This document shows, piece by piece, positions 32,998 to 63,501 of a stretch of DNA of 64,000 bases; the first letter of the stretch is position 1, and each line of letters opens with the position of its first letter. Below the pieces are notes generated by a model. The model saw only the letters and a program-made list of their open reading frames with translations, had not been told where the DNA came from and did no database searches. The position numbers were made by a program, and so were the translations under genes. Location: positions 1 to 64,000 of IMG/VR virus record IMGVR_UViG_3300044568_003163; one strand, given 5' to 3'.

Positions 32998-33058
32998 AGA
33001 CAAATATAACAAAAAAGCTCAACATAATGAAATATTGAGCTTAAAAGTTATTAACAAT
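32998..33058 (-). promoter_or_regulatory. Early promoter cassette 1 (TGTTAATAA box, hairpin, TATATTTG -7 box)
   Basis: Minus strand: TGTTAATAA (33056-33048), 39 nt including the AAGCTCAATAT/ATGTTGAGCTT stem, then TATATTTG (33008-33001), matching the Bacteroidota TAnnTTTG consensus. Confidence 0.75.
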
Positions 33059-33065
33059 TTATTAT

Positions 33066-33599
33066 TTAGTAATCGTTTTCGAAATCAGCTTCGGTCATGT
33101 TGTCATTAACCCATTTTTCTAATTTCTTAGCATCTTTAGTAAGACAAGCAACATGTTGGAAAGATGAATATTCATCACCTTCTTCCCATACTGCAACATC
33201 CACGTTTATATCTTTAATGTTGTAGATATAACCTGATAAATTAGAACCACCAAAAGGAGCTTCTCCACCAATACCTTTAAGTTCTTTAATGTTAAGATCC
33301 TTTTCTTCTACTCTGTGAGCTAATCCATAATATAAAGCTACTACGAATCGATAATCATCGTCTTCTGACATTGCATAAGTAACCGAATTGATATTTCCTT
33401 TCAATTGTTTAGCGATAGTTTCGAAGTTAGTTTTCATCTTAGCCAGCATATCATCATCTACCTCACCAGTTTCTTGTTGCATTTTAATCTGTGATGCTAA
33501 AGTAGTCTTAGTTTCAAAAGGGAATCCTGTATTATAATCGTATTTTTCGTTAATAAAATTCTCATTAACGAATTCTTGAAATGTTTGTAAATTTTTCAT
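33066..33599 (-). CDS. Putative internal head protein with capsid-targeting N-terminus
   Basis: MKNLQTFQEFVNENFINE resembles T4 CTS MKTYQEFIAE. Confidence 0.65.
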   Translation of the reverse strand: MKNLQTFQEFVNENFINEKYDYNTGFPFETKTTLASQIKMQQETGEVDDDMLAKMKTNFETIAKQLKGNINSVTYAMSEDDDYRFVVALYYGLAHRVEEKDLNIKELKGIGGEAPFGGSNLSGYIYNIKDINVDVAVWEEGDEYSSFQHVACLTKDAKKLEKWVNDNMTEADFENDY

Positions 33600-33611
33600 T
33601 TGTTTATTTGT

Positions 33612-34115
33612 TTAATATCTGTCGTCTTCTTCCCATTCATCATCGCTTCCATAATCATCGTCATCATCATATTCTTCTTCTTGGTACCATGATTGGTTAG
33701 GGTCGTTGTCAGGTTGTTCTGTAAAATCGTGACGATCTGCGTTAAAACGTCTTGGATCTTCTACTAAAGCAGGAAAAAGCACTTTACCACCTTTTACTCT
33801 AGTTTTTGCATGACCAAAAGCTAAATCAATACCTACGTTTCTTAATTCTTTACCAGGTTTTTTATCAGATTCGGTATAACCATTCATTTGGGCTAATAAC
33901 TCATAATAGTCTTTACCTCCAAATACTCCGTAACCTTCGTAACTATTTTCTTCGTATCTAGTACCTTTATCATCAAACATGTAAACGGTAATAGTATTTT
34001 GTCTTTCTGAACCAATTTGTCTTCCAGAATCTTGGGTCATCCATGAAAATTGACCTTCATTTAAAGGTTTAGAATTTTCATTAACAAACTCGCTGAAGGT
34101 TTTTAAATTTTTCAT
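33612..34115 (-). CDS. Putative internal head protein with capsid-targeting N-terminus, acidic tail
   Basis: MKNLKTFSEFVNENSKPLNE then GQFSWMTQD domain. Confidence 0.65.
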   Translation of the reverse strand: MKNLKTFSEFVNENSKPLNEGQFSWMTQDSGRQIGSERQNTITVYMFDDKGTRYEENSYEGYGVFGGKDYYELLAQMNGYTESDKKPGKELRNVGIDLAFGHAKTRVKGGKVLFPALVEDPRRFNADRHDFTEQPDNDPNQSWYQEEEYDDDDDYGSDDEWEEDDRY

Positions 34116-34116
34116 A

Positions 34117-34509
34117 TTATTTACCTAATCCTGAAGTTATTTTACCAACTGCAGCACCCCAATCGTCACCTTTAACGTCTTTAGAAATACCAGCAATTAC
34201 TTTGTCAGCAATTTTTTGATCGTATTTATCTCCGTGAGCTTTTTTCAAAAGCGTTTCTGCGTATTCTTTAAAGTCTTTTTCGTTTTTAATGTCAGCTTCA
34301 TTTACTTTACCTTCATTAACTATCGAAATACTTTTTATGTAATCGAAAAATTCCGCAGATTGCTCTTCATTTAATTCGATAGGTGAAGTAACACCAAATT
34401 GTTTAAGTTTGTTTTCGTATAGTTCATTGAACTTATGTGCTTGGTCTTCTTTAGTTTTTGCAACTTTTTGAAGTTTCTGCTCATTAACGAATTCTGAAAA
34501 TTTTTGCAT
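34117..34509 (-). CDS. Putative internal head protein
   Basis: MQKFSEFVNE N-terminus and internal IVNE/KVNE sites. Confidence 0.6.
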   Translation of the reverse strand: MQKFSEFVNEQKLQKVAKTKEDQAHKFNELYENKLKQFGVTSPIELNEEQSAEFFDYIKSISIVNEGKVNEADIKNEKDFKEYAETLLKKAHGDKYDQKIADKVIAGISKDVKGDDWGAAVGKITSGLGK

Positions 34510-34528
34510 TGTTTTATGTTTGTTTATT

Positions 34529-35071
34529 TTATCCGAAATATTCGTTTTCGAAGTATAACAACTCGAAGTTGTTTTCTGGGTTTATTAATTGTAGTGCATT
34601 TAAGAATCCTGCATACTCAGCAGTAGAAGATGTATTTTGCTTAACATAGTCTTGTAAGAATACGAAAGTAGCCATATCATTTAATCCAAAAATAGTTTTA
34701 GAATTTTCAGAATATGATTGAAGTAAACCATATTCCATGTCGTAAGCTTTTACGATGATGTCAGCCAAATTGTCGAAATTCATATCAGTCGTAACTGTAG
34801 GAATTGTAGGTTTAACATCCCAATCGGTCATATATTTTTGTAGACCTTGAGCATGAATTAGTTCATCTGTAGCTTCATTGTCAAAGAAAACAGCAGCTTT
34901 CTTATATTCCATGTTGTGGCACCAGTTAGCAGCACTACGATAGAAATAATGAGCAGTATATTCATCACCTATTCGTTGATTGATAAGTTTAACAACTTCA
35001 CTCCTAAGAGTATTAGGCTTTTTAACGATAGTTGGATCTACCGATTTAATTGATTCGTTTATGATATTCAT
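34529..35071 (-). CDS. Ferritin-like protein
   Basis: LINQRIGDEYTAHYFY, FFDNEATDELIHA (ExxH), AYDMEY, DMATFVFLQDYV four-helix ferritin pattern. Confidence 0.85.
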   Translation of the reverse strand: MNIINESIKSVDPTIVKKPNTLRSEVVKLINQRIGDEYTAHYFYRSAANWCHNMEYKKAAVFFDNEATDELIHAQGLQKYMTDWDVKPTIPTVTTDMNFDNLADIIVKAYDMEYGLLQSYSENSKTIFGLNDMATFVFLQDYVKQNTSSTAEYAGFLNALQLINPENNFELLYFENEYFG

Positions 35072-35104
35072 ATAATAGTTTTAGTTCTTTTATATATCCA
35101 ACAA

Positions 35105-36054: not shown

Positions 36055-36061
36055 ATCTATT

Positions 36062-36700: not shown

Positions 36701-36719
36701 TGTAGTTAATTTATTTAAA

Positions 36720-36777
36720 GTAAAAATAATCAAATTAATTGACAAGAAAAAATAAAGTGAGTAGAAGTTATTAACAA
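36720..36777 (-). promoter_or_regulatory. Early promoter cassette 2
   Basis: TGTTAATAA (36776-36768), 39 nt, TTGAT-TATTTTTAC. Confidence 0.65.
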
Positions 36778-36800
36778 AAAAGGAACTCAATAGAGTTCCT
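36776..36800 (-). terminator. Intrinsic terminator
   Basis: AGGAACTC-tatt-GAGTTCCT plus TTTTT running into cassette 2. Confidence 0.8.
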
Positions 36801-43034: not shown

Positions 43035-43450
43035 ATATGTTCTAGAATTTCAAGGTGAGCTTTAATCATTCTAGGTCTAGCCATTTCAAACGGCATAAAA
43101 CCAGCCCAATCAACTTCTGCAGCTTGTAATTGAGACTTAGGTATGATTTCGGATTGTAAACCTATTTGGTCTAATGATTTAATAGGTACAATATAATAAG
43201 TTAACTTCTTCCAGGGTTTTCCTGTTTTAGTTTTGATATAAAATAGCTCCATTTCTGGACCAATCAAATTTCGAGGAACATCAATACCAATTTCCTCTTT
43301 AGTTTCTCTGATTGCTGCTTCTATATTAGTTTCACCGGCATCAACATGACCTTTAGGGATCGAATAGGTTCCATACCATCTTCCATTAGTTGGATGAACT
43401 AATAAAATTTGGTCTTTATAGATTATTGCTAATCCTGACGAATGTTCCAT
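43031..43450 (-). CDS. Nudix hydrolase
   Basis: GHVDAGETNIEAAIRETKEEIG Nudix box. Confidence 0.92.
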   Translation of the reverse strand: MEHSSGLAIIYKDQILLVHPTNGRWYGTYSIPKGHVDAGETNIEAAIRETKEEIGIDVPRNLIGPEMELFYIKTKTGKPWKKLTYYIVPIKSLDQIGLQSEIIPKSQLQAAEVDWAGFMPFEMARPRMIKAHLEILEHI

Positions 43451-45366
43451 TATTGTTTGATTAAATTTACGATGTCACCATAAGTAACAATTTTAACTCC
43501 TAGCTTTTTAGCTTTTGCAGTTTTAGAAGTAGCAGAATCGATATCGTCAGTAATTAGATATGTTGAATCGGCAGATAAAGAAGTTTGAACATAACCATGA
43601 GGAGCAATTAATTTAACGAATTCCTCTTTAGTTTTAAATCCAAATTCTTTAGGAGAACCAGTCATTTCGAATTTAATTGAATTAGCATCGATTACTGTTT
43701 TAACTTCAGTTTCTATTATATATCCGTTAGCTTTTATCAGGTCGATTAAACGAATTACGGATTGATATTCAGGAGATGATTGATTATAGAAAGGTGCATA
43801 TGCCTCTCTAGATTTTCCTGAGAAATCTGGAGTTCCACCATCGAATAGTTTAGCAATTTGTTCGGATGTAGAGAATCCTACATTTTTAAAAGCTAATGAA
43901 GCAATGATTCGAGGCATTGTAATTGCTTTACGTTTTTCAAATGATTGTAAAATAATTTCTAATGCTCGACCTTTCTTAAAGTAACCTGACTTAATAAGAT
44001 TAGCTTCGTTGAATTTTGTTTTGTCGAATAAATCAAACATGGTTTTAATACCTGCATTATAGAGATTTTCAATAGTAGCACCACCAACATTATCTAATTC
44101 GAATGTACCAATTCCTACTGATAATCGACTAATCAATTGTTCTTTACAATTTGGATTTGTACAAAGTAAATGAACACCATCAATTTCAATTTTACATTCT
44201 AGAGTAGAACATTGAGCAGGTATGTGATCGTTAATGTCTTTAACAAATACTGGAGTGATTACGTGTCTTACGATAGGTATAATATCACCTGATTTTACGA
44301 TTACAACCTTAGCACCAGGAAATAATCCTTTGGTTTGAATATTTCCAAGATTATGTAATGCAACTCTAGAAACAGTAGTTCCATCTAAATCGATAGGTTC
44401 AAGTATACCAACTGGTTTGAATTCACCGGATTGTCCTAAGTTCCATTCGATTCTATTGATATATGTTACTGCTTCGGTTGGTGGAAATTTGATAGCCATT
44501 GCCCATTTAGGGTGATGGTCAGTTTCACCAATTTTGTTTCTTAATTCATGAGGAAATTTAATTACAAAACCATCAAGTCCATATTCACAATCATGAATTC
44601 GGTAATAATGAAACATATTGAAAATAGTTTCGAATTGAGAAGGAAAGAATGTATGAACAAAATCTGGAATAAGAAATCCATTACGTTTAAGTATTTCGAA
44701 TTGTTTAGTCCCATGTTCATAAGCATTATTTTCGTGGATTCGATATTCAAAAGCAATAAAATCAAAATCATTGATTACGCTTAAGTCTTTAATTTCATCT
44801 CGACCTAAGATACCGGCAACAAAGTTACGAGGATTTTTGTAATCCATCGAATATTTTTCGTTGAATAATTTGGTTTTGATAATTACTTCACCACGAATTT
44901 CGATTAAACCTGGAATGTTGATTTCGTTAGGAACGATATGCATTATTTTAGAAGTAATATCAGTTCCATGAGTTCCATTACCTCGAGTAGATGCAGTAAT
45001 TAGCTTACCGTTTTTGTAAGTTAAGTTACATGAAGAACCATCAAATTTAGGTTCAGCTTCTAATTGTAAAGTTTTTTGTAATAATGTACCAGCTGAATTT
45101 GTAGATTTTTCGATCCAATCGTTGAATTTTTGAATCGGTAAAGATTTATCTTCTAAATCGTTTACTTGTGTTTTTTGTAAAGATAACATTGGAGATAGGT
45201 GCTGATTTTCTTTTGAAGTATCATCAGATCCTACTATGTTGATTACGTTTGAACCTTCAGCTCTTAGTAAATCTTCTAATCTATCGAATGCGGTATCGGT
45301 CATTAAAGGATTACCATCGTAGTAAGCTTTCTTAGCGTCTAAATAAAGTTTTTCGTTTGTGTTCAT
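43450..45366 (-). CDS. ligA: NAD+-dependent DNA ligase
   Basis: YYDGNPLMTDTAFD, HLSPMLSL, EPKFDG (adenylated Lys), STRGNG, EIRGE, DGFVIK, WAMAIKFP, KSGDIIP, Cys4 Zn finger, C-terminal BRCT. Confidence 0.97.
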   Translation of the reverse strand: MNTNEKLYLDAKKAYYDGNPLMTDTAFDRLEDLLRAEGSNVINIVGSDDTSKENQHLSPMLSLQKTQVNDLEDKSLPIQKFNDWIEKSTNSAGTLLQKTLQLEAEPKFDGSSCNLTYKNGKLITASTRGNGTHGTDITSKIMHIVPNEINIPGLIEIRGEVIIKTKLFNEKYSMDYKNPRNFVAGILGRDEIKDLSVINDFDFIAFEYRIHENNAYEHGTKQFEILKRNGFLIPDFVHTFFPSQFETIFNMFHYYRIHDCEYGLDGFVIKFPHELRNKIGETDHHPKWAMAIKFPPTEAVTYINRIEWNLGQSGEFKPVGILEPIDLDGTTVSRVALHNLGNIQTKGLFPGAKVVIVKSGDIIPIVRHVITPVFVKDINDHIPAQCSTLECKIEIDGVHLLCTNPNCKEQLISRLSVGIGTFELDNVGGATIENLYNAGIKTMFDLFDKTKFNEANLIKSGYFKKGRALEIILQSFEKRKAITMPRIIASLAFKNVGFSTSEQIAKLFDGGTPDFSGKSREAYAPFYNQSSPEYQSVIRLIDLIKANGYIIETEVKTVIDANSIKFEMTGSPKEFGFKTKEEFVKLIAPHGYVQTSLSADSTYLITDDIDSATSKTAKAKKLGVKIVTYGDIVNLIKQ

Positions 45367-45384
45367 ATCGTTTTTAATTATAGA

Positions 45385-45451
45385 GTAAATTTAATCAATT
45401 TTTCCGATACTAGGAAATGTTTTGACAATTATTTACAAAACTTGTTAACAA
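45385..45451 (-). promoter_or_regulatory. Early promoter cassette 3
   Basis: TGTTAACAA (45450-45442), 48 nt, with TTTC-N20-TAAATTTAC. Confidence 0.7.
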
Positions 45452-45895
45452 TTACTCGTTTCTTGCTATGTCTCTTGACACATCTCTAGATTTAATTGTT
45501 TCTCGTTTATCATATTCTTTTTTACCTTTAGCTAGAAAGATTTCCATTTTGAAAAGTCCTCTTTCATTTTGAAATATTTTATAAGGTACAATTGAGTGGC
45601 CTTTGATGAGGTCCTTTTGTAGCTTTTTAAGTTCTTGTTTTCGCAGCAACAATTTGCGGTTGCAATCCGGTTCGTGACTATTAGGCGAATTCTTTGCAAC
45701 TGGAATATGAAGGCCTCTGACGTAAAGCTCATCATTCTCAAAAATACAATAAGTATCAGTAAGTCCAGCTAATCCTAGTCGAATAGATTTTACTTCACTG
45801 CCTTTTAATTGTATACCTGCAATTTCTGACCTCAATAAGTGATAATCAAATTTAGCTTTTCGATTGATGACGTTTACGTCTTTGACTTTTTTCAT
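45452..45895 (-). CDS. smpB: SsrA-binding protein SmpB
   Basis: NRKAKFDYHLL, AGIQLKGSEVKSIR, ELYVRGLHI, RKLLLRKQE, LAKGKKEYDKRETIK. Confidence 0.97.
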   Translation of the reverse strand: MKKVKDVNVINRKAKFDYHLLRSEIAGIQLKGSEVKSIRLGLAGLTDTYCIFENDELYVRGLHIPVAKNSPNSHEPDCNRKLLLRKQELKKLQKDLIKGHSIVPYKIFQNERGLFKMEIFLAKGKKEYDKRETIKSRDVSRDIARNE

Positions 45896-48929: not shown

Positions 48930-49454
48930 TTAAAATATTCTTGAGTTTTCGTTAATATAAGCAGTTGGGTCGTAAGATACAAATTGAATTCTAGCAATAT
49001 CTTTACAGTGGTTATCTCGAATACCACCAGTATCATGTGAGAATGCTTCGGCTATTTCCATTTCGATTTGTTTGTAGGTTTCAGGAGTTGCTTTTGATTT
49101 GATTACAACTTTTAAACCTTTACCTGAAGGAGTAATAAATGTTGCATGAACATAGTTTAACTTTTCGGCTTTAGCCTTTAATGTGATTACATCTTCGACA
49201 TTATCGATATCTAAACAAATTACACCATTGTATTCTTCTAATCCAGCAATTGAACGGTAGTTGAATTGACCGGTTGGCGTAAATACTGGCAGTTTGTCCT
49301 TTTTATGAGATTTTGAAGGATTTTCGTCTTGACGAATTTCTTCGATAATAGATTTGTACTTGTCACTACGAATTTCTTCGATGATAGTAGATAATGTAGA
49401 GACTTCCACCGGTTTGGTGTTTTTGACTGACTTGAAACGTGTGATTTTTAACAT
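48930..49454 (-). CDS. BT4734/VirE N-terminal-like (AEP primase-polymerase-related) domain protein
   Basis: KDKLPVFTPTGQF, YNGVICLDID, FITPSGKGLKVVI, CKDIARIQFVSYDP. Confidence 0.8.
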   Translation of the reverse strand: MLKITRFKSVKNTKPVEVSTLSTIIEEIRSDKYKSIIEEIRQDENPSKSHKKDKLPVFTPTGQFNYRSIAGLEEYNGVICLDIDNVEDVITLKAKAEKLNYVHATFITPSGKGLKVVIKSKATPETYKQIEMEIAEAFSHDTGGIRDNHCKDIARIQFVSYDPTAYINENSRIF

Positions 49455-49475
49455 AAGTTTGTTTTAATTAGATAA

Positions 49476-49543
49476 GTAAAACTAATCAATTTAGGTGACA
49501 TATGGAAATGTTTATTGATTTATTTTTTGAAAGTTATTAACAA
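49476..49543 (-). promoter_or_regulatory. Early promoter cassette 4
   Basis: TGTTAATAA (49542-49534), 49 nt, with TTTC-N20-TAGTTTTAC. Confidence 0.7.
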
Positions 49544-49544
49544 T

Positions 49545-50273: not shown

Positions 50274-50537
50274 TTAAGCTTTATAAAAGTTAAGTTCGTA
50301 GTTTCCTGAATCCATTCGGTACAAAATGACAGTTAAACATTTTTTAGCAAGATTACCAGTTCGCTTTACTATTAGGTCCAAATGATAAAATACGGTTTGT
50401 CCATATGCTACATGTTCGGTCCATATGTTTTCCGGAAATTTGATTTCGTAATGATTTTCATCAATGATAGATTGATATGCATTTTGCAATGCTTCATTTT
50501 GAGTAGCGAAATAAGTAGTTGGTTGGTATTTTGACAT
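50274..50537 (-). CDS. Hypothetical early protein
   Basis: First gene after promoter cassette 5. Confidence 0.6.
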   Translation of the reverse strand: MSKYQPTTYFATQNEALQNAYQSIIDENHYEIKFPENIWTEHVAYGQTVFYHLDLIVKRTGNLAKKCLTVILYRMDSGNYELNFYKA

Positions 50538-50560
50538 AATGAATTAGTTTAATTTGATAT

Positions 50561-50617
50561 ACAAATATAACAAAAAAACTCGATATTAAAAAATATCGAG
50601 TTAAAAGTTATTAACAA
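50561..50617 (-). promoter_or_regulatory. Early promoter cassette 5, with embedded hairpin that probably terminates the tmRNA transcript
   Basis: TGTTAATAA (50616-50608), 38 nt with AACTCGATATT/AATATCGAGTT stem plus T-run, TATATTTG (50569-50562). Confidence 0.75.
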
Positions 50618-50629
50618 AATAACCAGTAG

Positions 50630-51004
50630 TGGACCTAGTGGGAATCGAACCCACGTCTTGGAAAGATGTACAATGTATTCATTCACAGGCTTAGCAATAT
50701 TTTCTAACTTTGCAAAATATAAGGTTGGGTTAACACAGTTCCTTACCTTCAACTAACTGAGTGATATTATACTCCTGACACTAAGGAGTAATCGCTGTCG
50801 AATTTCTGTTCCTGAGTAATCGAGACTCGATTGCTTATGCAGCCATTAAGACTTCACCAGCACCAACGAATGCCATAGCATCTTCGAAGGTCATTGTTGA
50901 CTTGTTGTCATTTAAAAAGTTACATAGGTGATTTAAGAGTTTCCGATGCTAACTCTGCCTGCATATCAAAGAACTGGTCTACCAATCAAAGCCTGGTTAG
51001 GCCC
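50630..51004 (-). ncRNA. ssrA: tmRNA, 375 nt; tag (A)DNKSTMTFEDAMAFVGAGEVLMAA
   Basis: Acceptor GGGCCTA/TAGGTCC-A with G3:U70, T-arm GTGGG-TTCGATT-CCCAC, tag ORF 50909-50835 after TTTTTAAAT ending in Ala-Ala-stop; smpB lies 5 kb away. Confidence 0.93.
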
Positions 51005-52100: not shown

Positions 52101-52223
52101 TTATTTATTTTCAGTTTCGAATTGATTAGCCGTTTCACTGAAACTAGGTGAGTAATTAGCCATTGATGCATAAGAATTACGAGATTCTTGTTGTTCTTTT
52201 AATTCGATTTGAATAGAGTCCAT
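52101..52223 (-). CDS. Unlisted 40-aa ORF (MDSIQIELKEQQESRNSYASMANYSPSFSETANQFETENK)
   Basis: Manual translation; fills the gap between promoter cassette 6 and the zinc-finger gene. Confidence 0.5.
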   Translation of the reverse strand: MDSIQIELKEQQESRNSYASMANYSPSFSETANQFETENK

Positions 52224-52247
52224 AATGTGATTGTTTAATTTTGATAA

Positions 52248-52304
52248 GTAAAACTAATCAATTTCTACAACATAGAGAAATTTTTCATCATAAAGTTATT
52301 AACA
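52248..52304 (-). promoter_or_regulatory. Early promoter cassette 6
   Basis: TGTTAATAA (52304-52296), 39 nt, with TTTC-N20-TAGTTTTAC. Confidence 0.7.
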
Positions 52305-52326
52305 TATTATACATACTTTTGGGTAT

Positions 52327-52372: not shown

Positions 52373-55354
52373 ATGCCAACAGCAAATTACCCTAATAATC
52401 AAGATTATCGTTTAAATAAGACTCGTCCTCTTACATGGAAAGAAATGGACGATATGTTCAGAAAACCAAATATTTGGATTGGAGATTTTAGTTACGTTCA
52501 AGGAATGGTCGTGATGTGGGATGATTCAGTTCCACCAGTTAATAATGGAGATGATGGAACTTTATCTTTTTGGTTATGTGATTCCGATCACGTATCTTCC
52601 AATACTAATACTCCAGGAATATTAAATAGTCCATGGAGAAGAATAGGTGGATTAAGTGTTCCAGGACCTACAGGAGAATCGGGTGGTCCTATAGGACCTA
52701 CTGGAATGACCGGTGCTACTGGTAGAACTGGAATGACAGGTGCAACAGGTTCTACTGGAATGACTGGTGCGGTTGGACAAACTGGTGCTACTGGACAAAC
52801 TGGAATGACTGGTGCTGTTGGACCTACCGGAGTTGGTTTACCCGGATCTAAAGGTGATACTGGAAATATTGGTGCTACAGGAATGACTGGGTTAGTAGGA
52901 CCAACTGGAGCAGGAGTAACTGGTGCTACTGGACAAACTGGACAAACTGGACCTACCGGTTTCAACGGACAAACTGGTCCTACAGGAATGACTGGTGCAG
53001 GAGAAACCGGTGCTACAGGAATGACAGGAATGACAGGTGCTACTGGAATGACAGGACCTATAGGACCTACTGGTGCAAATGGAATCCCGATGGGTAAACC
53101 ATCTGATGCATTAGATATGTATTACGATGATGATCCGTCTTCACAAGGTTGTAATCCTGGTGATCCGCTCAAACTATCGTTTGATGTAGTACGAACTGGA
53201 GTTACTTCACTTGCATATGTAGTAGATAATTCCGGTATTTCGACTGCAGGAGGTACAAAAATATTAATACAAAAAGAAGGAAATTATTTTATATCGGTAA
53301 ATGTTAATATAAAAATTCTAACTCCGGTCGACGGTAGAGCCGAAGTTTCTTTAAATTTATATTATGATGATACCTCTGGAAGCTATACTAAATTCGACGG
53401 ATTTCAAGGAAATGTTATATTAGATGCAGAAGGTTTAACTCCAACTGGAACATTAAAAGATTCTATTATGATTCAAGGAATTTTTAATGTAGATGCTAGT
53501 TGGATTTCTTCAAACAGAAAAATATATGCCGTATTAGAAAATGCTGCAGCAGGAATTTCTCTTTCATCCATCGTCGTATCACCTATTTCTACTTCATTAT
53601 CTATCATCTCGTTAGAAGGTGGAATTGGTGCTACTGGAGCAGGAGTTGCTGGACAAACTGGTGCTACTGGTATGACTGGATTAGTTGGACCAACTGGAGC
53701 AGGTCAAACTGGTGCTACTGGACAAACTGGTGCTACCGGAGAAACTGGAATGACAGGTGCTACTGGAATGACTGGTCCTACTGGTGCTGGACAAACTGGT
53801 GCTACCGGAATGACTGGTCCTACTGGTCTAGGGTACGATCTTACTTCTTCAATATCTGCTACTGCTGGATTAGGGGTAAAAGTTTTTACCGTAAATAAAG
53901 ATGCATCTCTTTCTGCATTTTCCATTGGAAACCGAGTAAGAGTAAGTTCATCTTTCGTAATTTGGATGGAGGGAGAGATAACATCATATGCAGGAAATAC
54001 CTTAATTGTGAATGTTGATAAAGTAGTTGGTAGTGGTGCTTCTGCGAGTAGTTGGGATATCGACATTGCTGGACTTCCTGGACCTACTGGAATGACTGGA
54101 ATGACTGGTGCTACTGGAAGAACTGGTAGTACAGGAATGACTGGTGCTACTGGAAGAACTGGTAGTACAGGAATGACTGGAGCTCAAGGTCCTATCGGAC
54201 CAGCAGGACCATTTGGTGCTACTGGTATGACTGGATTAGTTGGACCAACTGGATCAGGCACTACATTTATTCATGAAACTGCTACTTTCGTAGATCCTAA
54301 CGGTAGCAACAGTACTGGTGCAGTAGGAGATAAACAAAAACCATTTTTGACGATAGAAGAAGCAATAGGTCAAGCTCGTTCACGAGCAAACGAACAAGGC
54401 GGACCATTTACTATCATCGTATATCCGGGTATTTATGAGGAAAACAAGCAATGGAATTTTGAAAACGACGAAGGAACTATTAAATTTATCGGTCAAGTTT
54501 ATATAGAATTTGATAACCCAAACCCGGTAGATTATTTTATCAAAATGAGTAATTCGTATATTAATTTCGTTGGAGATGACCGAGGGACGAATAATTTCCA
54601 AATTGGCGGTACTTGTAATACTGGAACATATTTAACCATATCTAGTAAATTCGGTACTAATGTGTATTTATTCGATGTTCGAAATACTAAACTTAAACTA
54701 TCAAATATTACAATAGATACAGGATTTTTAGGAAAATTTGGAGTAGATTGGAAATACCCCGGTGGTGGTAGTAAAGTAGATATTGATAATTGTAGAATGA
54801 GATCTATTATACATCCTAATATCGAGGTTTCTGCCGACGGCGCAGTTGATGGTCTTTCTAGATTACCAGATATATTAATTAGAGATTCAATTCTAGCATC
54901 GGCTTTTGGACCTAATATTGGATATTATGCATTTACTAATGGTTTAGAATCTGAAGCTACTTTATTGATTGATAATAGCACAATCTATCAAGATCCTACC
55001 TATGGAGGTTTAGGTAAATTAACACCTGGATTTCCAACTCCAGTAGGAGGAAAATTACCTCACGTAGACAGTTTCATATATTCAACGATGAATCTGGATA
55101 ACCAATTAAGGTTGATATTTTCTGGGACGAAATTCCATATGAACAAATGGTCTCCACCAGCAGAAGGAAGTGGTGGACCTGAAGCTTGCGTACATTTTGA
55201 TAATTCTGGAAATGATTTCAAACATGACACGATGTCAACTTACACTAATACTCGAAATTTTTTAGGAGCCAGCATCTGGACTCATGTAGTTGACCATATA
55301 ACGGAGTTAAAAGGTAGTACGAAATCTCCAATTGAATATATGAACATACTTTAA
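52373..55354 (+). CDS. Collagen-like fibre protein II (G-X-T repeats, C1q-like domain, C-terminal parallel beta-helix)
   Basis: N-terminus paralogous to fibre I ([26 protein letters not shown]); collagen runs; [11 protein letters not shown]...[10 protein letters not shown]...[10 protein letters not shown] beta-helix cap motif. Confidence 0.85.
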
Positions 55355-56503: not shown

Positions 56504-57463
56504 CTATGATAGTATCAATTCAAAAGTTTCAACATAATCTGAAGGTTTTACACCTTCGTTCATGTAAGAAATAATTGATTTTTCTTTAAGTTTAGCTTCG
56601 ACCATAATCCAAGCACCAGTACCCCAATCGGTAATTTCTTCGTAAATCCAATCGGCATGAGCCCTTGCCATTTTTTCAGGTTGTTCGTGATTTATCGTAG
56701 ATGAAAAGTGAAAACCTGCTGGTATATTACCCCATGTTGATGCAGCAAGTTTAGCGGCTTCTTCATGAGTTAAATTACCACTACAAAATTTATGGTGATG
56801 TGAATCGAAAGTAATTGGAATTTTGATATCGGCATAGAGTAAGTCGTACAAATCTTTAACCGAATATTGAGAAGCTTTGTCGTCGTTTTCAATAACCAAA
56901 CGAGCTTTAGTAGTAGGATGTAGCTTTTTGAAGTTTTCAATAAATCGTTTAGCACATTCTTCTTTACCGCCTTGTGTAGTATTTAAGTGAATGTTGATTT
57001 GATTCCAATGAGAAGGTTCAAGACCCATAGCATCGAAAATTTGAGAGTGCTGATCTAATTCCTTGATGGTTTTCTTAACTACAAATTTACTTTGTGAGCC
57101 AAGAACATTGAAAGGTCCTGGATGGAATTCTAGACGTTGGCCATATCGAGTAGCTAATGTACCAGCTAATTGAAGATTCTTTTCGATCATTGACCAATCT
57201 GGTAAATCTTGCAATTCATATTCGGACATCCATGGAAACATATTAGAAGAGATACGAAAGAACTTTATTCCTTTACGTTCATTCCATTGTATGATTTTTA
57301 CAAGGTCTTTAACATTTTGCAGGGCTAAAGATGAGACTACTGCATTTGTTTCTCGTTGAGCTTCGAAAGTTTTCTTAATCATACTTCGATTAGTAAAAAT
57401 TCCTTCGCTTTCTTGTAATTCTAGGTTGATGCAGCAATAGCCGATTCTTTCGTGTATATTCAT
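56504..57463 (-). CDS. uvsE: UV-damage endonuclease (UvsE/UVDE)
   Basis: RIGYCCIN, FFRISSNMFP, FHPGPFNVLGS, INIH, RLVIENDD, ITFDSHHH, HFS, AHADW, MVEAKLKE. Confidence 0.93.
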   Translation of the reverse strand: MNIHERIGYCCINLELQESEGIFTNRSMIKKTFEAQRETNAVVSSLALQNVKDLVKIIQWNERKGIKFFRISSNMFPWMSEYELQDLPDWSMIEKNLQLAGTLATRYGQRLEFHPGPFNVLGSQSKFVVKKTIKELDQHSQIFDAMGLEPSHWNQINIHLNTTQGGKEECAKRFIENFKKLHPTTKARLVIENDDKASQYSVKDLYDLLYADIKIPITFDSHHHKFCSGNLTHEEAAKLAASTWGNIPAGFHFSSTINHEQPEKMARAHADWIYEEITDWGTGAWIMVEAKLKEKSIISYMNEGVKPSDYVETFELILS

Positions 57464-57479
57464 AGTATATTTTTATAAG

Positions 57480-57536
57480 ACAAATATAACAAAAAACCTC
57501 GATAAAAGAAAATATCGAGGTGAAAGTTGTTAACAA
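57480..57536 (-). promoter_or_regulatory. Early promoter cassette 7 with embedded terminator hairpin
   Basis: TGTTAACAA (57535-57527), 38 nt with ACCTCGATA/TATCGAGGT stem plus T-run, TATATTTG (57488-57481). Confidence 0.75.
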
Positions 57537-58619
57537 TTATTTAGAACCAAATCCGATAGTTTTTCTATCGACTTGCATTTCTGAATAAACCTCTTCTTGA
57601 TTATATACTTCTGATACGGTCATTGGTTTATCGATTGTAGTGTTTTTACCTAAATGGTCAGATAACTTTTGAGCAGCTTTTTGGTCTAGCTTTTTAAATT
57701 CATGTTTTAAGATTAGACGACCTTTACGCAATAGAGCTTCATCGATAGTAGTAATGTCACTGTTGAACGTACAGATAATTTGAGTACCTAAGAAGTCTGA
57801 TATAATTCCATCTGATAGATTTAGCAGTTTATCTACAGTTGCACCACCTTGTTTACGAGATTTAATAGCTTCTTCTGCATCTTCGATAATCAAAACTGAA
57901 TTTGGGAAATCTGCCATTAGTGGTAAAAATCCAGGATCAGTTAATGAATTGATTAGTTGATTAGGTAGATAAATCATCGTTCTCGTTTCAGCTAACAAGG
58001 AAATCAGATATCGAATGTACATAGATTTTCCTGTTCCAGGGAGTCCATGTAAAAGAGCAATTCCTTTTTTGTTTTCTCGAGAAAGAGATTCCATTAAGTA
58101 ATCATGTTTAGTAGCCCATTCTTCACCATAATTCATTTCGATATCTAATTCGGGAATGTTGATGTCAAACGATCTTAAATCTAAGCCACCATCATCTTGA
58201 ATCACCATATACACTTTAGTTTTATCTACTTTGTATACTTGCATTTTCATTATATCTTTAATGAATTTTTGTGCAAGTTCTGCTTTATCAAGCGACCAGT
58301 AAAATTCAACTTCTAAGGTATATTCTTTCTTAGTTTCTAAATTGTATTTCACGTAAACAACTAAGTCCTTATCGCCGGTCTTTAATTTACCTCTAACATT
58401 TTTAGGAGCCATTAACTCTTTTTTGTTTTTGAATTTGTAATTGGCTGAAAAAACTTCAAAGTTTTCGTTGAACCATTTATCCCATTTACGTTTTGGGATT
58501 ACGATTCCATTTTCACTCCATTCGCTAGGACAAACATCATTATGCATCCACCAAAAGATGTCTTGATGATTGTAAGCTTGCGTAGTTTCTAGAGTTTTAA
58601 TGTGTTCAGATGGATTCAT
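57537..58619 (-). CDS. AAA+ ATPase
   Basis: LLHGLPGTGKS (Walker A), LIIEDAE (Walker B), LLNLSDG, IDEALLRKGRL (Arg finger). Start set at ATG 58619. Confidence 0.9.
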   Translation of the reverse strand: MNPSEHIKTLETTQAYNHQDIFWWMHNDVCPSEWSENGIVIPKRKWDKWFNENFEVFSANYKFKNKKELMAPKNVRGKLKTGDKDLVVYVKYNLETKKEYTLEVEFYWSLDKAELAQKFIKDIMKMQVYKVDKTKVYMVIQDDGGLDLRSFDINIPELDIEMNYGEEWATKHDYLMESLSRENKKGIALLHGLPGTGKSMYIRYLISLLAETRTMIYLPNQLINSLTDPGFLPLMADFPNSVLIIEDAEEAIKSRKQGGATVDKLLNLSDGIISDFLGTQIICTFNSDITTIDEALLRKGRLILKHEFKKLDQKAAQKLSDHLGKNTTIDKPMTVSEVYNQEEVYSEMQVDRKTIGFGSK

Positions 58620-59810: not shown

Positions 59811-59812
59811 AG

Positions 59813-60019: not shown

Positions 60020-60020
60020 C

Positions 60021-61248: not shown

Positions 61249-61273
61249 AATAGTTATATGCAATTATTTCTAT

Positions 61274-61603: not shown

Positions 61604-61779
61604 TAGACCTTTACTATTTTTTCAACAATAGTTGCTCTTATTGGATAGCAACAAATTCGATCACCTTCTTTATTATAGAAGACATATGCTCCATTGTCGA
61701 TAACCATTCGTTGGGCTTCAACCGATTCAGTATACATACTGTTATTTCCGGGTAAAATTCTTAAGCGATAAACTTCCAT
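61603..61779 (-). CDS. Unlisted 58-aa ORF (MEVYRLRILPGNNSMYTESVEAQ...IVEKIVKV)
   Basis: Manual translation; TAATG overlap with the next gene. Confidence 0.6.
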   Translation of the reverse strand: MEVYRLRILPGNNSMYTESVEAQRMVIDNGAYVFYNKEGDRICCYPIRATIVEKIVKV

Positions 61780-61780
61780 A

Positions 61781-62269
61781 TTATTTTCTGTTTAAAATTC
61801 TAATTGCTTTGTTTGTGCATTCATTTGTTAGGCCATAACCTATGTCGATACAATCTGGATGATTGATGTTATTTGAACAACAAACAAAATTACCTAATTG
61901 ACTATCTAACATATCTTCGTCATCATCTAAAATAACATAATTGGTGATTTGATAATATTGGTCTAAGATTGCTTGGATCTCATCACCTCGTTGTAACTTT
62001 TCACGGAATTCCTCATCTTTTACGTTTCTCCAAAGATCTGGTGTAACTCCGATAAGTTCACCAGCTAATCCTCTCTTTTCCCACATTGCTTGCATTTTAG
62101 CAAGTCCAGCATGTCTCCATGAAGAACTCATTACAATCTTAGCTCCAGTTTCATCTACAATTCGTTTTAGATTGTCCATGAAATGTTGATGGAATATTTG
62201 ACCAAACTCATCGTGACCTTGTCCTATCACGTTAAGCACTCCGTCGATATCAAGAAATATTACTTTCAT
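61781..62269 (-). CDS. HAD-domain phosphatase (RNA-repair-type HAD) II
   Basis: MKVIFLDIDGVLN, IVMSSSWR, RGDEIQ, YVILDDDED. Confidence 0.82.
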   Translation of the reverse strand: MKVIFLDIDGVLNVIGQGHDEFGQIFHQHFMDNLKRIVDETGAKIVMSSSWRHAGLAKMQAMWEKRGLAGELIGVTPDLWRNVKDEEFREKLQRGDEIQAILDQYYQITNYVILDDDEDMLDSQLGNFVCCSNNINHPDCIDIGYGLTNECTNKAIRILNRK

Positions 62270-62535
62270 AACTTAAAGTATTTGCCTACTTTATCTAGCA
62301 TTACCATATCTCGATTATCTTTAAAGGGCAGATCATCAATATCTTCGTATAAGTTTTGAACAAATACGTCTGCTTTATTTTTTGCAATGTAATTATTAAG
62401 TTCCTTACGTTTTAAAGCAATTACAATTTCTTTAAGTTCGTCGACAGATAAGCCATCCAAATCACCAGATCCATCACTATAAACTTTGATTTCTCGAGCA
62501 AGTGTAATAATAAAATTTGGTGATGATTTAACCAT
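62266..62535 (-). CDS. Hypothetical protein
   Basis: ORF track; ATGA overlap. Confidence 0.55.
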   Translation of the reverse strand: MVKSSPNFIITLAREIKVYSDGSGDLDGLSVDELKEIVIALKRKELNNYIAKNKADVFVQNLYEDIDDLPFKDNRDMVMLDKVGKYFKL

Positions 62536-62707
62536 TTGATTTGTTCATTACGATTCCTAATTTATTCATATCAGCAAGATTTCCTTTAACATACTTTTTA
62601 TTCCATTCTCCGTATGATAGGTTATAATTAATTTCCACCCAAAGATTAAAACCGCCAAACCATCTGCGAGTCCAAAAGTATTTTCCTGTTAGTCTTTTTT
62701 CGTTCAT
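62528..62707 (-). CDS. Unlisted 59-aa ORF (MNEKRLTGKYFWTRRWFGGFNLWVEI...)
   Basis: Manual translation; ATGA overlap with the upstream gene. Confidence 0.55.
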   Translation of the reverse strand: MNEKRLTGKYFWTRRWFGGFNLWVEINYNLSYGEWNKKYVKGNLADMNKLGIVMNKSNG

Positions 62708-63000
62708 ATTAATTGGCCGTTTTCAATTTCTTCGGATCTCTTCAATAAACTAACTTCCTTTCTAATTTCACGTCTCCACCATTCCTTTGTAAGCTTAGGA
62801 TTATGAATGTCCTTATAAATAGTAAATGCTACTTTAGGTTTTGCAATTTCTATTTCTTCACCCCATAAAATCCATTTCTTACGTTTAGTAATTTCCATAC
62901 CATCGTAAAACTCGGTATATTCATAACTGTCGCATTCATTAGCTTCGCATTGAACGGCATATTGAAATTTTCTACCGTCGATTTCTATTTCTTTTAACAT
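62704..63000 (-). CDS. Hypothetical protein
   Basis: ORF track. Confidence 0.6.
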   Translation of the reverse strand: MLKEIEIDGRKFQYAVQCEANECDSYEYTEFYDGMEITKRKKWILWGEEIEIAKPKVAFTIYKDIHNPKLTKEWWRREIRKEVSLLKRSEEIENGQLI

Positions 63001-63191
63001 TATTCATTAGATATTAAGGCACCTAGCCAAGTTAATTCAAGTCCAACAACAAGTATTCTTCCACCGATAGAGTCAAATAACCACCAATGCATAGGATTAA
63101 AGTCCATAGCAACGAAAGAACCTACTACATAACATGATATATGCAATAGAATATAAAGCGCGAGTTTAAATAGATTTCTCTTCATTATCAA
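63000..63191 (-). CDS. Small membrane protein
   Basis: Two hydrophobic segments. Confidence 0.5.
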   Translation of the reverse strand: MIMKRNLFKLALYILLHISCYVVGSFVAMDFNPMHWWLFDSIGGRILVVGLELTWLGALISNE

Positions 63192-63411
63192 GTATTTGAT
63201 TTTGGGTAGTATTAACTGATGCCGGAAATAACATTCGAGTAAGTAACATCATTAAGAACATATCGTTATACGATACGAAAGGTCCATCAAAAATTCTTGG
63301 TACAGTAAGATTCCAAAGAATCATGGTTGGAAATGCAAATACGGCAATTACAATAGCAGCAAGAATAAAATACTGAAAAGTTGCACTTATTCCGAGTAAG
63401 ATTGTCTTCAT
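63166..63411 (-). CDS. Small membrane protein
   Basis: Hydrophobic; first gene after promoter cassette 8. Confidence 0.55.
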   Translation of the reverse strand: MKTILLGISATFQYFILAAIVIAVFAFPTMILWNLTVPRIFDGPFVSYNDMFLMMLLTRMLFPASVNTTQNQILDNEEKSI

Positions 63412-63443
63412 AATAAATAGTTTATTGTTATATGTTTGAAAGA

Positions 63444-63501
63444 GTAAATATAATCAACATTATCTAAAAATGAAAACTTTAGAGCATTTAGTTATTAACA
63501 A
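63444..63501 (-). promoter_or_regulatory. Early promoter cassette 8
   Basis: TGTTAATAA (63500-63492), 39 nt, with TTTC-N19-TATATTTAC. Confidence 0.7.

What the first reader, a model, noticed from the sequence alone, without database searches (positions are those of the whole stretch)
32998..63501. Eight-copy early-promoter cassette with a helically phased TGTTAAYAA (DnaA-box-like) upstream element
Seen: at 33.0, 36.7, 45.4, 49.5, 50.6, 52.3, 57.5 and 63.5 kb a TGTTAA(T/C)AA box precedes a TAnnTTT(G/A) -7 box. The gaps are 39, 39, 48, 49, 38, 39, 38 and 39 nt, two classes differing by one helical turn, with TTTC/TTTT about 19-20 nt before the -7 box. Established: TAnnTTTG and TTTG are Bacteroidota primary-sigma elements, and TTATTAACA is one mismatch from the relaxed DnaA box TTWTNCACA. 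Inference: a phase-dependent activator site contacting RNAP. It could bind host DnaA (coupling phage early transcription to, or titrating, the replication initiator) or a dimeric factor recognising the TGTTAACA palindrome.
Basis: partly seen in the sequence, partly recalled or inferred. Interest (0 to 1): 0.68.

Follow-up and report, generated by a model that had tools for sequence, protein, structure and literature searches.

The report
Phage promoters carrying DnaA-type boxes
A 294-kb freshwater phage drives its non-structural genes from about 37 near-identical promoters whose upstream box and spacing match those of its hosts' own dnaN and gyrB promoters, and the phage encodes a stand-alone copy of the DNA-binding domain of the replication initiator DnaA.

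Summary
The eight window copies belong to 37 cassettes in a 294,034-bp jumbo phage, all on the minus strand. Each has the form TTGTTAAYAACTT, spacer, ATTTYC (-33), TTGnTTAnnTTT(G/A) (-7), conserved leader, ATG. Box-to-TA gaps are 38/39 (27 copies) or 48/49 (10), with nothing between. Fifteen copies embed a terminator-like hairpin.

- **Relatives:** related lake phages keep the box and the 39-nt gap while the interior of the cassette differs.
- **Hosts:** Flavobacteriales carry the same box, in the same orientation, 38-40 nt before the -7 box of dnaN and 48-50 nt before that of gyrB. Other lineages have canonical DnaA boxes (TGTGAATAA, TGTGGAAAA) at exactly those positions.
- **Other targets and controls:** one sampled genome has three in-phase boxes before nrdBA. 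The rRNA promoters checked lack the box at this spacing.
- **Phage protein:** the phage encodes a 97-aa protein consisting only of DnaA domain IV (Pfam Bac_DnaA_C, E 4e-18), as do relatives G001 and G004.

Best reading (about 0.6): the box is a Flavobacteriales-type DnaA box at a helix-phased, class-I-like position. It would be read by host DnaA and/or the phage's mini-DnaA. Binding, activation and start sites remain untested.

The parts
32979..33058 (-). Cassette 1. Box at 33048-33056, -7 box at 33001-33008, gap 39. Embedded hairpin plus T-run. Precedes the ORF at 32385-32978.
   Evidence: Core-promoter PWM score 37.7. Hairpin -12.9 kcal/mol, z = -8.8.
36701..36778 (-). Cassette 2. Box at 36768-36776, -7 box (TATTTTTA) at 36721-36728, gap 39. 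No strong hairpin. Precedes the ORF that starts at 36700.
   Evidence: PWM score 32.1. Folding energy -2.3 kcal/mol.
45367..45452 (-). Cassette 3. C-variant box TGTTAACAA at 45442-45450, -7 box at 45386-45393, gap 48 (long class). Precedes the NAD-dependent DNA ligase gene at 43450-45366.
   Evidence: Ligase assigned by PHROG 3869, E 5.6e-133. PWM score 46.7.
49455..49544 (-). Cassette 4. Box at 49534-49542, -7 box at 49477-49484, gap 49 (long class, with an A-rich 10-nt insert after CTTT). Precedes the ORF at 48930-49454.
   Evidence: PWM score 48.9.
50538..50618 (-). Cassette 5. Box at 50608-50616, -7 box at 50562-50569, gap 38. Embedded hairpin plus T-run. It lies 11 nt after the end of a phage tmRNA gene and precedes the ORF at 50274-50537.
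   Evidence: Hairpin -12.1 kcal/mol, z = -7.9. tmRNA at 50627-51004. PWM score 50.6.
52224..52306 (-). Cassette 6. Box at 52296-52304, -7 box at 52249-52256, gap 39. Precedes the small ORF at 52101-52223.
   Evidence: PWM score 40.4.
57464..57537 (-). Cassette 7. C-variant box at 57527-57535, -7 box at 57481-57488, gap 38. Embedded hairpin plus T-run. Precedes the endonuclease-like gene at 56504-57463.
   Evidence: PHROG 8420, E 2.3e-46. Hairpin -13.0 kcal/mol, z = -9.7. PWM score 48.9.
63412..63502 (-). Cassette 8. Box at 63492-63500, -7 box at 63445-63452, gap 39. It is the weakest core match. It follows two tRNA-Leu genes and precedes the ORF at 63166-63411.
   Evidence: PWM score 20.7.

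Best explanation
The eight copies are members of a 37-copy family of promoters read by the host's primary-sigma RNA polymerase (Bacteroidota -33/-7 type). They head the non-structural genes, some tRNAs and the phage's own sigma-factor gene in a 294-kb lake phage.

The upstream box TGTTAAYAA(C) is a Flavobacteriales-type DnaA box. It is placed about 43 or 53 bp upstream of the -7 element, counted from box centre to TA, which is roughly -55 or -65. That is the same orientation and the same helical face as in the hosts' own dnaN promoters (short spacing) and gyrB promoters (long spacing).

A protein with a DnaA domain IV fold binds the box. The candidates are host DnaA and/or the phage's 97-aa domain-IV-only protein at G000:C1:104285-104578, which lies outside the window. 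From that position the bound protein changes how well RNA polymerase starts at the cassette.

My preferred version, which is inference: host DnaA helps the first round. The phage mini-DnaA cannot bind ATP or oligomerise, so it then acts as a constitutive reader of the same boxes. The roughly 37 boxes per phage genome would also draw DnaA away from the host.

In 15 of the 37 copies the spacer also holds a hairpin plus T-run. That structure would stop read-through from the gene upstream, making a compact terminator-promoter unit.

Shown: the anatomy, the copy number, the spacing classes, the conservation in related phages, the host promoter parallels, and the domain identity of the phage protein. 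Inferred: binding, direction of the effect, timing and titration.
For: **Cassette family**
- There are 44 core promoters, all on the minus strand. 37 of them have the box at gap 38/39 or 48/49 and none at 40-47.
- The 13-mer TGTTAAYAACTTT occurs 26 times on the reverse strand and 0 times on the forward strand.

**Related phages**
- G001 has 26 boxes forward and 1 reverse; G005 has 15 and 0.
- Among IMG/VR hits, gap 39 accounts for 63 of 127. These hits have different -33 regions, so the box and its spacing are the conserved parts.

**Hosts**
- The genome scan shows spacing peaks at 38 (17 hits) and 49 (34 hits) over a background of about 4. The genes downstream are gyrB, dnaN, parE-like and dnaX.
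- In an evenly drawn sample, TGT[GT]NA[AT]AA lies at gap 48-50 in 23 of 31 forward hits before gyrB (50 genomes). It lies at gap 38-40 in 14 of 21 before dnaN (30 genomes). Reversed controls gave 3 and 6 hits in total.
- Canonical boxes sit at the same spot: TGTGGAAAA at gap 49 (L294, L297, L316) and TGTGAATAA at gap 39 (L330, L331, L337).
- The same genomes (G025, G056) use a TGTG box at dnaN and a TGTT box at gyrB with a single DnaA.
- The Kordia nrdBA promoter has three in-phase boxes, two of the TGTT type and one of the TGTG type.
- dnaA promoters carry TTGTTCACA or TTTTTCACA over the -7 box.
- Host rRNA promoters lack the box at this spacing.

**Phage reader**
- Pfam Bac_DnaA_C, 63.8 bits against a cut-off of 31.5, E 4e-18.
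- phmmer hits to solved DnaA structures 8btg, 2hcb, 1l8q and 3pvp.
- 34% identity to residues 408-494 of a host DnaA, E 9e-15.
- G001 and G004 encode one as well, behind a box at gap 60.

**Established background**
- Domain IV alone gives sequence-specific binding, and the consensus box is TTWTNCACA (PMC5835720).
- No phage RNA polymerase was found, and the phage sigma gene sits behind a box cassette.
Against: - The box departs from TTWTNCACA at position 6 (C to A). In E. coli this lies in the part of the box (CACA) that the relaxed consensus holds fixed. All 37 phage copies have this departure and none is canonical, which would also fit a different protein whose best site is TGTTAATAAC.
- GTTAATAAC is a 9-bp palindrome.
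- I could not locate a host oriC to see whether TGTT-type boxes occur there. The three-box search did not beat its control.
- The link between mini-DnaA and the box is loose. G071 has a mini-DnaA (51% identical) but only 3 exact boxes. G002 and G003 have a cluster of 6 boxes and no Bac_DnaA_C hit.
- The mini-DnaA gene's own promoter in this phage lacks the forward box.
- There is no transcript start data. The only RNA run is held as contigs.
- A site at -55 or -65 could repress as well as activate.
Confidence: 0.6

Rival explanations
1. The box is the site of an unidentified host transcription factor, not DnaA. For example, a dimeric helix-turn-helix protein could read the palindrome GTTA-A-TAAC and control replication and nucleoid genes, and the phage has copied that site.
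For: The box is strictly TGTTAAYAAC in all 37 phage copies and in many host sites, with conserved flanks (T before, C and TT after) beyond a 9-mer DnaA box. It is a palindrome. It misses the DnaA consensus at a position the consensus holds fixed. Some host sites precede genes with no link to replication, such as a TonB-dependent receptor and YtxH.
Against: At orthologous promoter positions the box is replaced by non-palindromic variants and by canonical DnaA boxes, all in one orientation. Those variants would be 3-4 mismatches from a palindromic consensus but only 0-1 from the relaxed DnaA box. The gene set (dnaN, gyrB, nrd, dnaX, parE, HU) fits DnaA regulons known elsewhere (from memory). The phage carries a DnaA-fold reader.
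Confidence: 0.17
2. The box has no reader of its own. It is a conserved end of a mobile promoter-terminator cassette (PeSL-like), kept uniform by duplication and recombination between copies. The two spacing classes would simply be two cassette lineages.
For: The long class shares a conserved A-rich insert (TTGAAAATAA-like) right after CTTT, which suggests common descent. Copies are very alike over about 90 nt. 15 of 37 are composite terminator/promoter units like the PeSLs of T4-type phages (PMC2839356, PMC4122927). De Bruijn contigs of metagenomes break and pile up at the cassettes.
Against: Distant phages keep the box and the 39-nt gap while the interior of the cassette has diverged. The same box at the same gaps is found in chromosomal promoters of many host genera, which phage cassette homogenisation cannot explain. 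No intermediate gaps occur among 37 copies.
Confidence: 0.08
3. The box is an UP-element-like contact for the alpha subunit of Bacteroidota RNA polymerase. It would boost strong promoters in general, with no separate factor.
For: It lies in the -50 to -65 region, where UP elements and alpha-CTD contacts lie in E. coli (from memory). The phage promoters are probably strong.
Against: It is absent at this spacing from the tandem rRNA promoters of two host genomes. It contains invariant G and C positions. Two spacings a full helical turn apart are not expected for a fixed UP element. It is 2-5 fold under-represented in host genomes and mostly limited to a few specific promoters.
Confidence: 0.05
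4. The box works at the RNA level. As UGUUAAUAAC it would mark the 3' end of the upstream message, just after the stop codon and before the hairpin, and would serve in termination, processing or ribosome release rather than in initiation.
For: The box usually starts 2-3 nt after the stop codon of the upstream gene or after a tRNA or tmRNA 3' end, and it carries two in-frame TAA codons. In 15 copies a terminator-like hairpin follows.
Against: The distance that is fixed is the one to the -7 box, not to the stop codon or to the hairpin. 22 copies have no strong hairpin. In host gyrB and HU promoters the neighbouring gene can be divergent, so the box is not in a transcript there. One HU site is inverted yet at the same distance.
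Confidence: 0.04

Closest known systems
DnaA as a transcription factor at chromosomal promoters (dnaA autoregulation and nrdAB in E. coli; dnaA-dnaN in B. subtilis; the Caulobacter DnaA regulon). Recalled from memory; box consensus and domain IV role from PMC5835720.
   Same: A 9-bp DnaA-type box lies upstream of or over promoters of replication genes. The host set found here (dnaN, gyrB, nrdBA, dnaX, and dnaA itself) overlaps the classical targets.
   Different: Here the commonest box has A where the consensus has C at position 6. The boxes sit at fixed, helix-phased distances (29/39/49/60 nt) from the -7 element. The same design is repeated about 37 times in a phage genome.
Stimulation of phage lambda pR by host DnaA (from memory)
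   Same: A phage promoter is tuned by the host replication initiator through DnaA boxes.
   Different: Lambda has one promoter with boxes downstream of it and no phage-encoded DnaA-like protein. Here there is a genome-wide family of promoters with one upstream box each, plus a phage domain-IV protein.
PeSL (promoter-early stem-loop) cassettes of T4-type phages (PMC2839356, PMC4122927)
   Same: Small, repeated, composite terminator/early-promoter units lie between genes of the non-structural part of a large phage genome. 15 of 37 copies here have the stem-loop.
   Different: In PeSLs the stem-loop precedes a sigma-70 promoter, and no factor-binding box is part of the definition. Here the hairpin lies inside the promoter, around the -33 element, and an upstream box is the most conserved part. 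A role in gene shuffling was not tested here, and the phage shows no T4-like structural genes.
Class I activator-dependent promoters (CRP at -61.5/-71.5; Fis at rRNA and tRNA promoters), from memory
   Same: A single upstream site works from positions that differ by whole helical turns. That is the pattern seen here in the phage (38/39 against 48/49) and in hosts (29, 39, 49-50, 60).
   Different: Contact with the alpha C-terminal domain is only an analogy.
T4 MotA/AsiA middle promoters (from memory)
   Same: A phage-encoded DNA-binding protein reads a box repeated at many phage promoters that keep the host -10-type element.
   Different: The MotA box replaces the -35 element at -30 and needs sigma appropriation by AsiA. 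Here the -33 element is kept, the box is at about -55/-65, and the host has the same box.
datA-type DnaA titration loci (PMC5835720)
   Same: Many DnaA boxes on one replicating DNA could lower free DnaA.
   Different: datA is a cluster of boxes at one locus. Here the boxes are single, spread over 230 kb, and each is tied to a promoter.

Membership tests
Bacteroidota primary-sigma promoter (-33 TTTG / -7 TAnnTTTG) | TAnnTTTG-type -7 element | tested here: met
   All 37 cassettes have TAnnTTT(G/A). The commonest forms are TATATTTG and TAGTTTTA.
Bacteroidota primary-sigma promoter (-33 TTTG / -7 TAnnTTTG) | TTTG about 19-21 nt upstream of the -7 element | tested here: inconclusive
   A conserved ATTT(T/C)(C/T) lies 20 nt upstream. 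It reads TTTC or TTTT, not TTTG.
Bacteroidota primary-sigma promoter (-33 TTTG / -7 TAnnTTTG) | Transcripts start a few nt after the -7 element | not testable with these tools
   The only RNA run is kept as contigs and shows no ends.
DnaA box | Match to TTWTNCACA | tested here: not met
   The reverse complement of the box is TT(A/G)TTAACA, with A instead of C at position 6 in all 37 copies. It is therefore filed as DnaA-box-like, not as a consensus box.
DnaA box | Interchangeable with consensus boxes at the same place in orthologous promoters | tested here: met
   In gyrB promoters at gap 49: TGTTAATAA in many genomes, TGTGGAAAA in L294, L297 and L316. In dnaN promoters at gap 39: TGTTAATAA or TGTTGAAAA against TGTGAATAA in L330, L331 and L337.
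DnaA box | Found at genes known to be under DnaA control, and at oriC | tested here: inconclusive
   Met for dnaN, nrdBA and gyrB. oriC of the hosts could not be located.
DnaA box | Bound by DnaA | not testable with these tools
   No binding data are available. Gel shift, DAP-seq or ChIP is needed.
DnaA domain IV (Pfam Bac_DnaA_C) protein: the phage 97-aa protein | Profile match above the curated cut-off | tested here: met
   63.8 bits against a cut-off of 31.5, E 4e-18. The PHROG 'DnaA-like replication initiation protein' match is weak, E 3e-4.
DnaA domain IV (Pfam Bac_DnaA_C) protein: the phage 97-aa protein | Basic-loop arginine and recognition helix (DHTTV-type) present | tested here: met
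   The alignments to 8btg, 2hcb, 3pvp and host DnaA keep the Arg (R35) and give NHATVIHA against DHTTVIHA or DHATVLHA.
Full-length DnaA initiator | AAA+ domain III and domain I present | tested here: not met
   The ORF is 97 aa and aligns only to residues 408-494 of a 500-aa host DnaA. It is not an initiator of the DnaA type.
PeSL cassette | Composite terminator stem-loop plus early promoter, repeated in the genome | tested here: met
   15 of 37 copies have a 9-13 bp stem (-11.9 to -16.5 kcal/mol, z at or below -4). Fourteen of the 15 stems are followed by a T-run.
PeSL cassette | Sits at indel or replacement boundaries between related phage genomes | not tested
   No whole-genome comparison of close relatives was made.
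Class I activator site | Functional positions differ by whole helical turns | tested here: met
   Phage gaps are 38/39 and 48/49 only. Host gaps peak at 29, 38-40, 48-50 and 60. G001's mini-DnaA promoter has gap 60.
Class I activator site | Activation through contact with RNA polymerase | not testable with these tools
   Reporter and in vitro transcription assays are needed.
UP element | A/T-rich tract at strong promoters such as rRNA promoters | tested here: not met
   The box has invariant G and C positions. It is absent at this spacing from rRNA promoters of G006 and G008.

The most novel reading that the evidence does not exclude
The phage lineage has captured the DNA-binding domain of DnaA and uses it as a dedicated transcription factor. 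About 37 phage promoters are built as copies of host DnaA-dependent promoters (dnaN-type and gyrB-type spacing). The domain-IV-only protein, free of ATP control, would switch them on or off. At the same time it would occupy host DnaA boxes and so blind oriC and the host replication regulon. This would be one small protein coupling phage gene timing to shut-off of host replication. A corollary is that Flavobacteriales DnaA, which has DHATV where other bacteria have DHTTV, has a shifted box preference (TGTT rather than TGTG).
Probability: 0.3. Interest if true: 0.85.

Novelty: new variant of a known kind. Interest (0 to 1): 0.72.

Why it matters
Little is known about how phages of Bacteroidota time their genes, or about promoter-proximal regulators in this phylum. 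This finding would give three testable things.

1. A defined, highly repeated phage promoter with a separable upstream box. It could be useful as a genetic part in Flavobacteriia.
2. A predicted DnaA regulon in Flavobacteriales, with boxes at fixed helical phase and an unusual box variant. That links a natural change in the DnaA recognition helix to a possible shift in specificity.
3. A phage-encoded stand-alone DnaA domain IV. It is a compact candidate both for a transcription switch and for an inhibitor of host replication initiation.

If binding is confirmed, this would be a clear case of a virus copying the control logic of its host's replication genes across its whole early programme.

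Tried and rejected
- Near-identity search of 8 kb against deposited phage genomes found no match.
- Full-text searches for the box strings returned only unrelated hits such as genome-editing tags. I found no described motif.
- The RNA evidence does not help. One metatranscriptome run holds 6% of the words, but as contigs only, so it shows no starts or ends and no proof of transcription. The depth spikes at the cassettes come from the repeats.
- Locating host oriC failed. There is no DnaA-box cluster next to dnaA in three genomes. A list of TTWTYCACA sites in one genome showed no cluster and was truncated. A three-box pattern gave as many control hits as real ones, although one real hit was the nrdBA promoter.
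- A covariation test between the DnaA recognition helix and the box type gave no signal. DHATV is nearly universal in the order, and both box types occur with it.
- The single-sequence AlphaFold model of the 97-aa protein had mean pLDDT 49.6, which is too poor to use. No fold search was made.
- Pfam and PHROG scans of the large structural ORFs gave almost nothing, so the phage could not be placed by its structural genes.
- No phage RNA polymerase was found. The beta-subunit domain search came back empty. The T7-type family search also came back empty, but its controls did not ring, so that result says nothing.
- I considered IHF-, Fur-, NrdR-, parS- and AdcR-like sites from memory. None matches the box, and none was tested formally.
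The read-laying run kept to 6,000 letters.
- The large protein search was not used, because the family scans settled the identity of the 97-aa protein.

Full report
**1. The observation.** TGTTAAYAA occurs 11 times in the window, against 4.1 expected. Eight of these are on the minus strand at the places named. Each is followed by TAnnTTT(G/A) at 39, 39, 48, 49, 38, 39, 38 and 39 nt. The joint pattern has 9 matches against 0.19 expected, and no shuffle out of 100 reaches that number. All eight lie between minus-strand ORFs and end 14-33 nt before an ATG.

**2. Scale and anatomy.**
- The window is the first 64 kb of a 294,034-bp IMG/VR virus record. CheckV puts it at 91% complete. GC is about 32%, and 421 of 429 crudely called genes are on the minus strand.
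- The 13-mer TGTTAAYAACTTT occurs 26 times on the reverse strand and never on the forward strand.
- A weight matrix of the core (-33 region to leader) finds 44 promoters, all on the minus strand. 37 of them have the exact box at gap 38 (6), 39 (21), 48 (1) or 49 (9), and none in between.
- The consensus runs: taAaT-TGTTAAYAAC-TTt, spacer, ATTT(t/c)c, TgTC, TTGnT-TAnnTTT(G/A), tcTTATAAaTTAAAac, then ATG.
- The long class carries an A-rich 10-nt insert just after CTTT.
- Fifteen copies, three of them in the window, have a 9-13 bp stem of -11.9 to -16.5 kcal/mol (z at or below -4). The stem wraps the -33 element, and in 14 of the 15 a T-run follows and leads into the -7 region. These are compact terminator-promoter units.
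- No cassette lies in 1-33 kb, the block with tail-fibre-like and other large ORFs.
- Cassettes precede a DNA ligase gene, an endonuclease gene, many small ORFs, tRNAs and the phage's sigma-factor gene.
- A second motif, [C/T]ATATAA[T/C/A], lies 8-45 nt before 81 start codons, including genes of the structural block.
- No phage RNA polymerase was found.
- So the cassette looks like the host-polymerase (early/middle) class and the second motif like the late class. This timing is inferred.

**3. Related phages.**
- The phage is found in lake-water metagenomes.
- A pattern scan of IMG/VR gave 127 matches, 63 of them at gap 39.
- Large relatives carry many boxes on one strand: G001 has 26 against 1, and G005 has 15 against 0.
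- In those phages the box, the CTTT and the 39-nt gap are kept, while the -33 region reads GATTTTTTTATTCC. This points to the box and its distance as the selected features.

**4. The hosts have the same element.**
- A scan of one genome per prokaryotic species, using box, 31-52 nt, then TTATATTTG, gave a spacing histogram with sharp peaks at 38 (17) and 49 (34).
- The hits are chromosomal promoters of Flavobacteriia. They include gyrB in more than 30 genomes (gap 49-50), dnaN in Chryseobacterium (38) and Aquimarina (40), a parE-like gene (38) and dnaX (49).
- That scan forced the box, so I drew even samples of Flavobacteriales by protein instead. In 50 gyrB upstream regions, the 9-mer family TGT[GT]NA[AT]AA pointing towards the promoter gave 31 hits across gaps 15-89. 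23 of these fell at 48-50.
- In 30 dnaN regions it gave 21 hits, 14 of them at 38-40, with smaller groups at 29 and 60. The reversed control gave 3 and 6 hits with no peak, and the inverted orientation gave 4 and 6.
- At exactly these positions some lineages have consensus DnaA boxes: TGTGGAAAA at gap 49 before gyrB, and TGTGAATAA at gap 39 before dnaN. Others have TGTTGAAAA, TGTTGATAA, TGTTAAAAA or TGTTAATAA.
- Two genomes (G025, G056) use a TGTG box at dnaN and a TGTT box at gyrB.
- The nrdBA promoter of a Kordia genome has two TGTT boxes and one TGTG box in phase.
- The dnaA promoters carry TTGTTCACA or TTTTTCACA over the -7 element, as expected for autoregulation.
- In two complete genomes the exact 10-mer is rare (10 and 14 copies, 2-5 fold below its reversed control) and mostly intergenic. 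It lies before gyrB, HU (two boxes, one inverted at the same distance) and an RNR subunit, and also before a TonB-dependent receptor and YtxH.
- rRNA promoters lack it at this spacing.

**5. The phage has its own reader.**
- A family search of the phage genome found a Bac_DnaA_C domain (63.8 bits, E 4e-18) in a 97-aa ORF at G000:C1:104285-104578 on the minus strand.
- It matches solved DnaA proteins only over their domain IV. It is 34% identical to residues 408-494 of a host DnaA.
- It keeps the basic-loop arginine. Its recognition helix reads NHATVIHA.
- Flavobacteriales DnaA reads DHATV (43 of 47 sampled), where B. subtilis, Aquifex and M. tuberculosis read DHTTV.
- Relatives G001 and G004 encode a 103-aa homologue (40% identity), there behind a TGTTAATAAC box at gap 60.
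- In this phage the gene is served by one of the seven box-less core promoters. These tend to carry inverted TTTAACA repeats 11 nt apart.
- The association is not strict. G071 has a homologue (51% identity) but few exact boxes. G002 and G003 have six boxes in one 8-kb stretch and no Bac_DnaA_C hit.
- Domain IV alone is known to give sequence-specific binding to DnaA boxes (PMC5835720).

**6. Explanation.**
- The most economical reading is that the box is a DnaA-type box of the kind used in Flavobacteriales. The phage cassette would copy the layout of host DnaA-controlled promoters, with the short class like dnaN and the long class like gyrB.
- Whole-turn steps (29, 39, 49-50, 60) and a single orientation point to a protein bound on one face of the helix that touches the transcription machinery. 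This is how class I activators work, although repression is not excluded.
- I put about 0.6 on a DnaA-fold reader. About 0.17 goes to a different host factor, and the remainder to the minor rivals.

**7. Main arguments against.**
- The invariant A at box position 6.
- The palindromic look of GTTAATAAC.
- My failure to find a host oriC for comparison.

**8. Comparison with known systems.**
- DnaA-regulated promoters and DnaA stimulation of lambda pR are the nearest mechanisms.
- PeSL cassettes of T4-type phages are the nearest genomic form (PMC2839356, PMC4122927).
- T4 MotA is the nearest case of a phage-encoded reader of a repeated promoter box.
- None of these combines a host-shared box at phased upstream positions, about 37 copies, and a phage-encoded stand-alone DnaA domain IV. 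I therefore rate this as a new variant of a known kind.

**9. Limits.**
- Everything about binding, direction of the effect, start sites, timing and titration is inference.
- Gene calls are crude (longest ATG ORFs).
- Host genomes are anonymous samples of the order.
- Orthologous promoters are not independent events. The independent lines are the two promoters (dnaN and gyrB), the nrd, dnaX, parE and HU sites, the several box variants, and the phages.

Noticed in passing
window 50627-51004 (-): A phage-encoded tmRNA gene (Rfam RF00023, 68 bits). ARAGORN did not call it. A metatranscriptome contig covers 50635-51065 with 4 differences. The gene ends 11 nt before the box of cassette 5.
   Followed up: partly
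window 63592-63877 (-), continuing to about 73 kb of G000: Two tRNA-Leu genes open a tRNA array. Cassettes at G000:70868 and 73502 sit directly between tRNA genes, so the cassette also serves tRNAs.
   Followed up: partly
whole record; in the window at e.g. 17650, 20179, 25452, 51827, 58640: A second promoter-like motif, [C/T]ATATAA[T/C/A], lies 8-45 nt before 81 called start codons, including structural genes. It resembles T4-type late promoters and may be read with the phage sigma factor.
   Followed up: partly
G000:C1:201.5-202.2 kb (-), outside the window: A 208-aa phage sigma factor (Sigma70_r2 and r4) whose gene lies behind box cassette 202288. A weaker r2-like match lies at 251.9 kb.
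   Followed up: partly
window 52373-55354 (+): A collagen-like tail-fibre gene is one of only eight plus-strand genes and has higher GC (0.39). Metagenome contigs show many repeat-length variants at 52.7-53.0 kb.
   Followed up: no
window 17661-18824 (-): A protein in the structural block ends in an S1 RNA-binding domain (E 1.7e-26). The other large ORFs of 3-25 kb have no Pfam or PHROG match.
   Followed up: no
G000:104611, 121310, 236211, 86682 (outside the window): Box-less core promoters carry AAACTTTAACA, then 4 nt, then TTTAACA. These are inverted half-box-like repeats 11 nt apart, just upstream of the -33 element. One of these promoters drives the mini-DnaA gene.
   Followed up: partly
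G000:187342 and 266528 (outside the window): A box plus hairpin is followed by the late-type ATATAA motif instead of a -7 box.
   Followed up: no
host loci L249/L255 and the 33 gyrB promoters: Many Flavobacteriaceae gyrB promoters also have a consensus DnaA box (TTTTTCACA or TTTTCCACA) 5-6 nt upstream of the TGTTAATAAC box, in the opposite orientation. They often also have a GC-rich hairpin plus T-run around the -33 region, as in the phage cassettes.
   Followed up: partly
host DnaA genes, loci L357-L406: Flavobacteriales DnaA reads DHATV (43 of 47) or DHSTV (4 of 47) in the recognition helix, where the solved DnaA proteins read DHTTV. This may relate to the TGTT-type boxes.
   Followed up: partly
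viral loci L023, L025, L042, L053, L080, L101, L109, L114; and L013, L047, L068, L076, L078: Other, smaller phage contigs carry single TGTTAATAAC boxes at gap 37 or 48 before a -7 box. The box is therefore used by more than one phage lineage.
   Followed up: no
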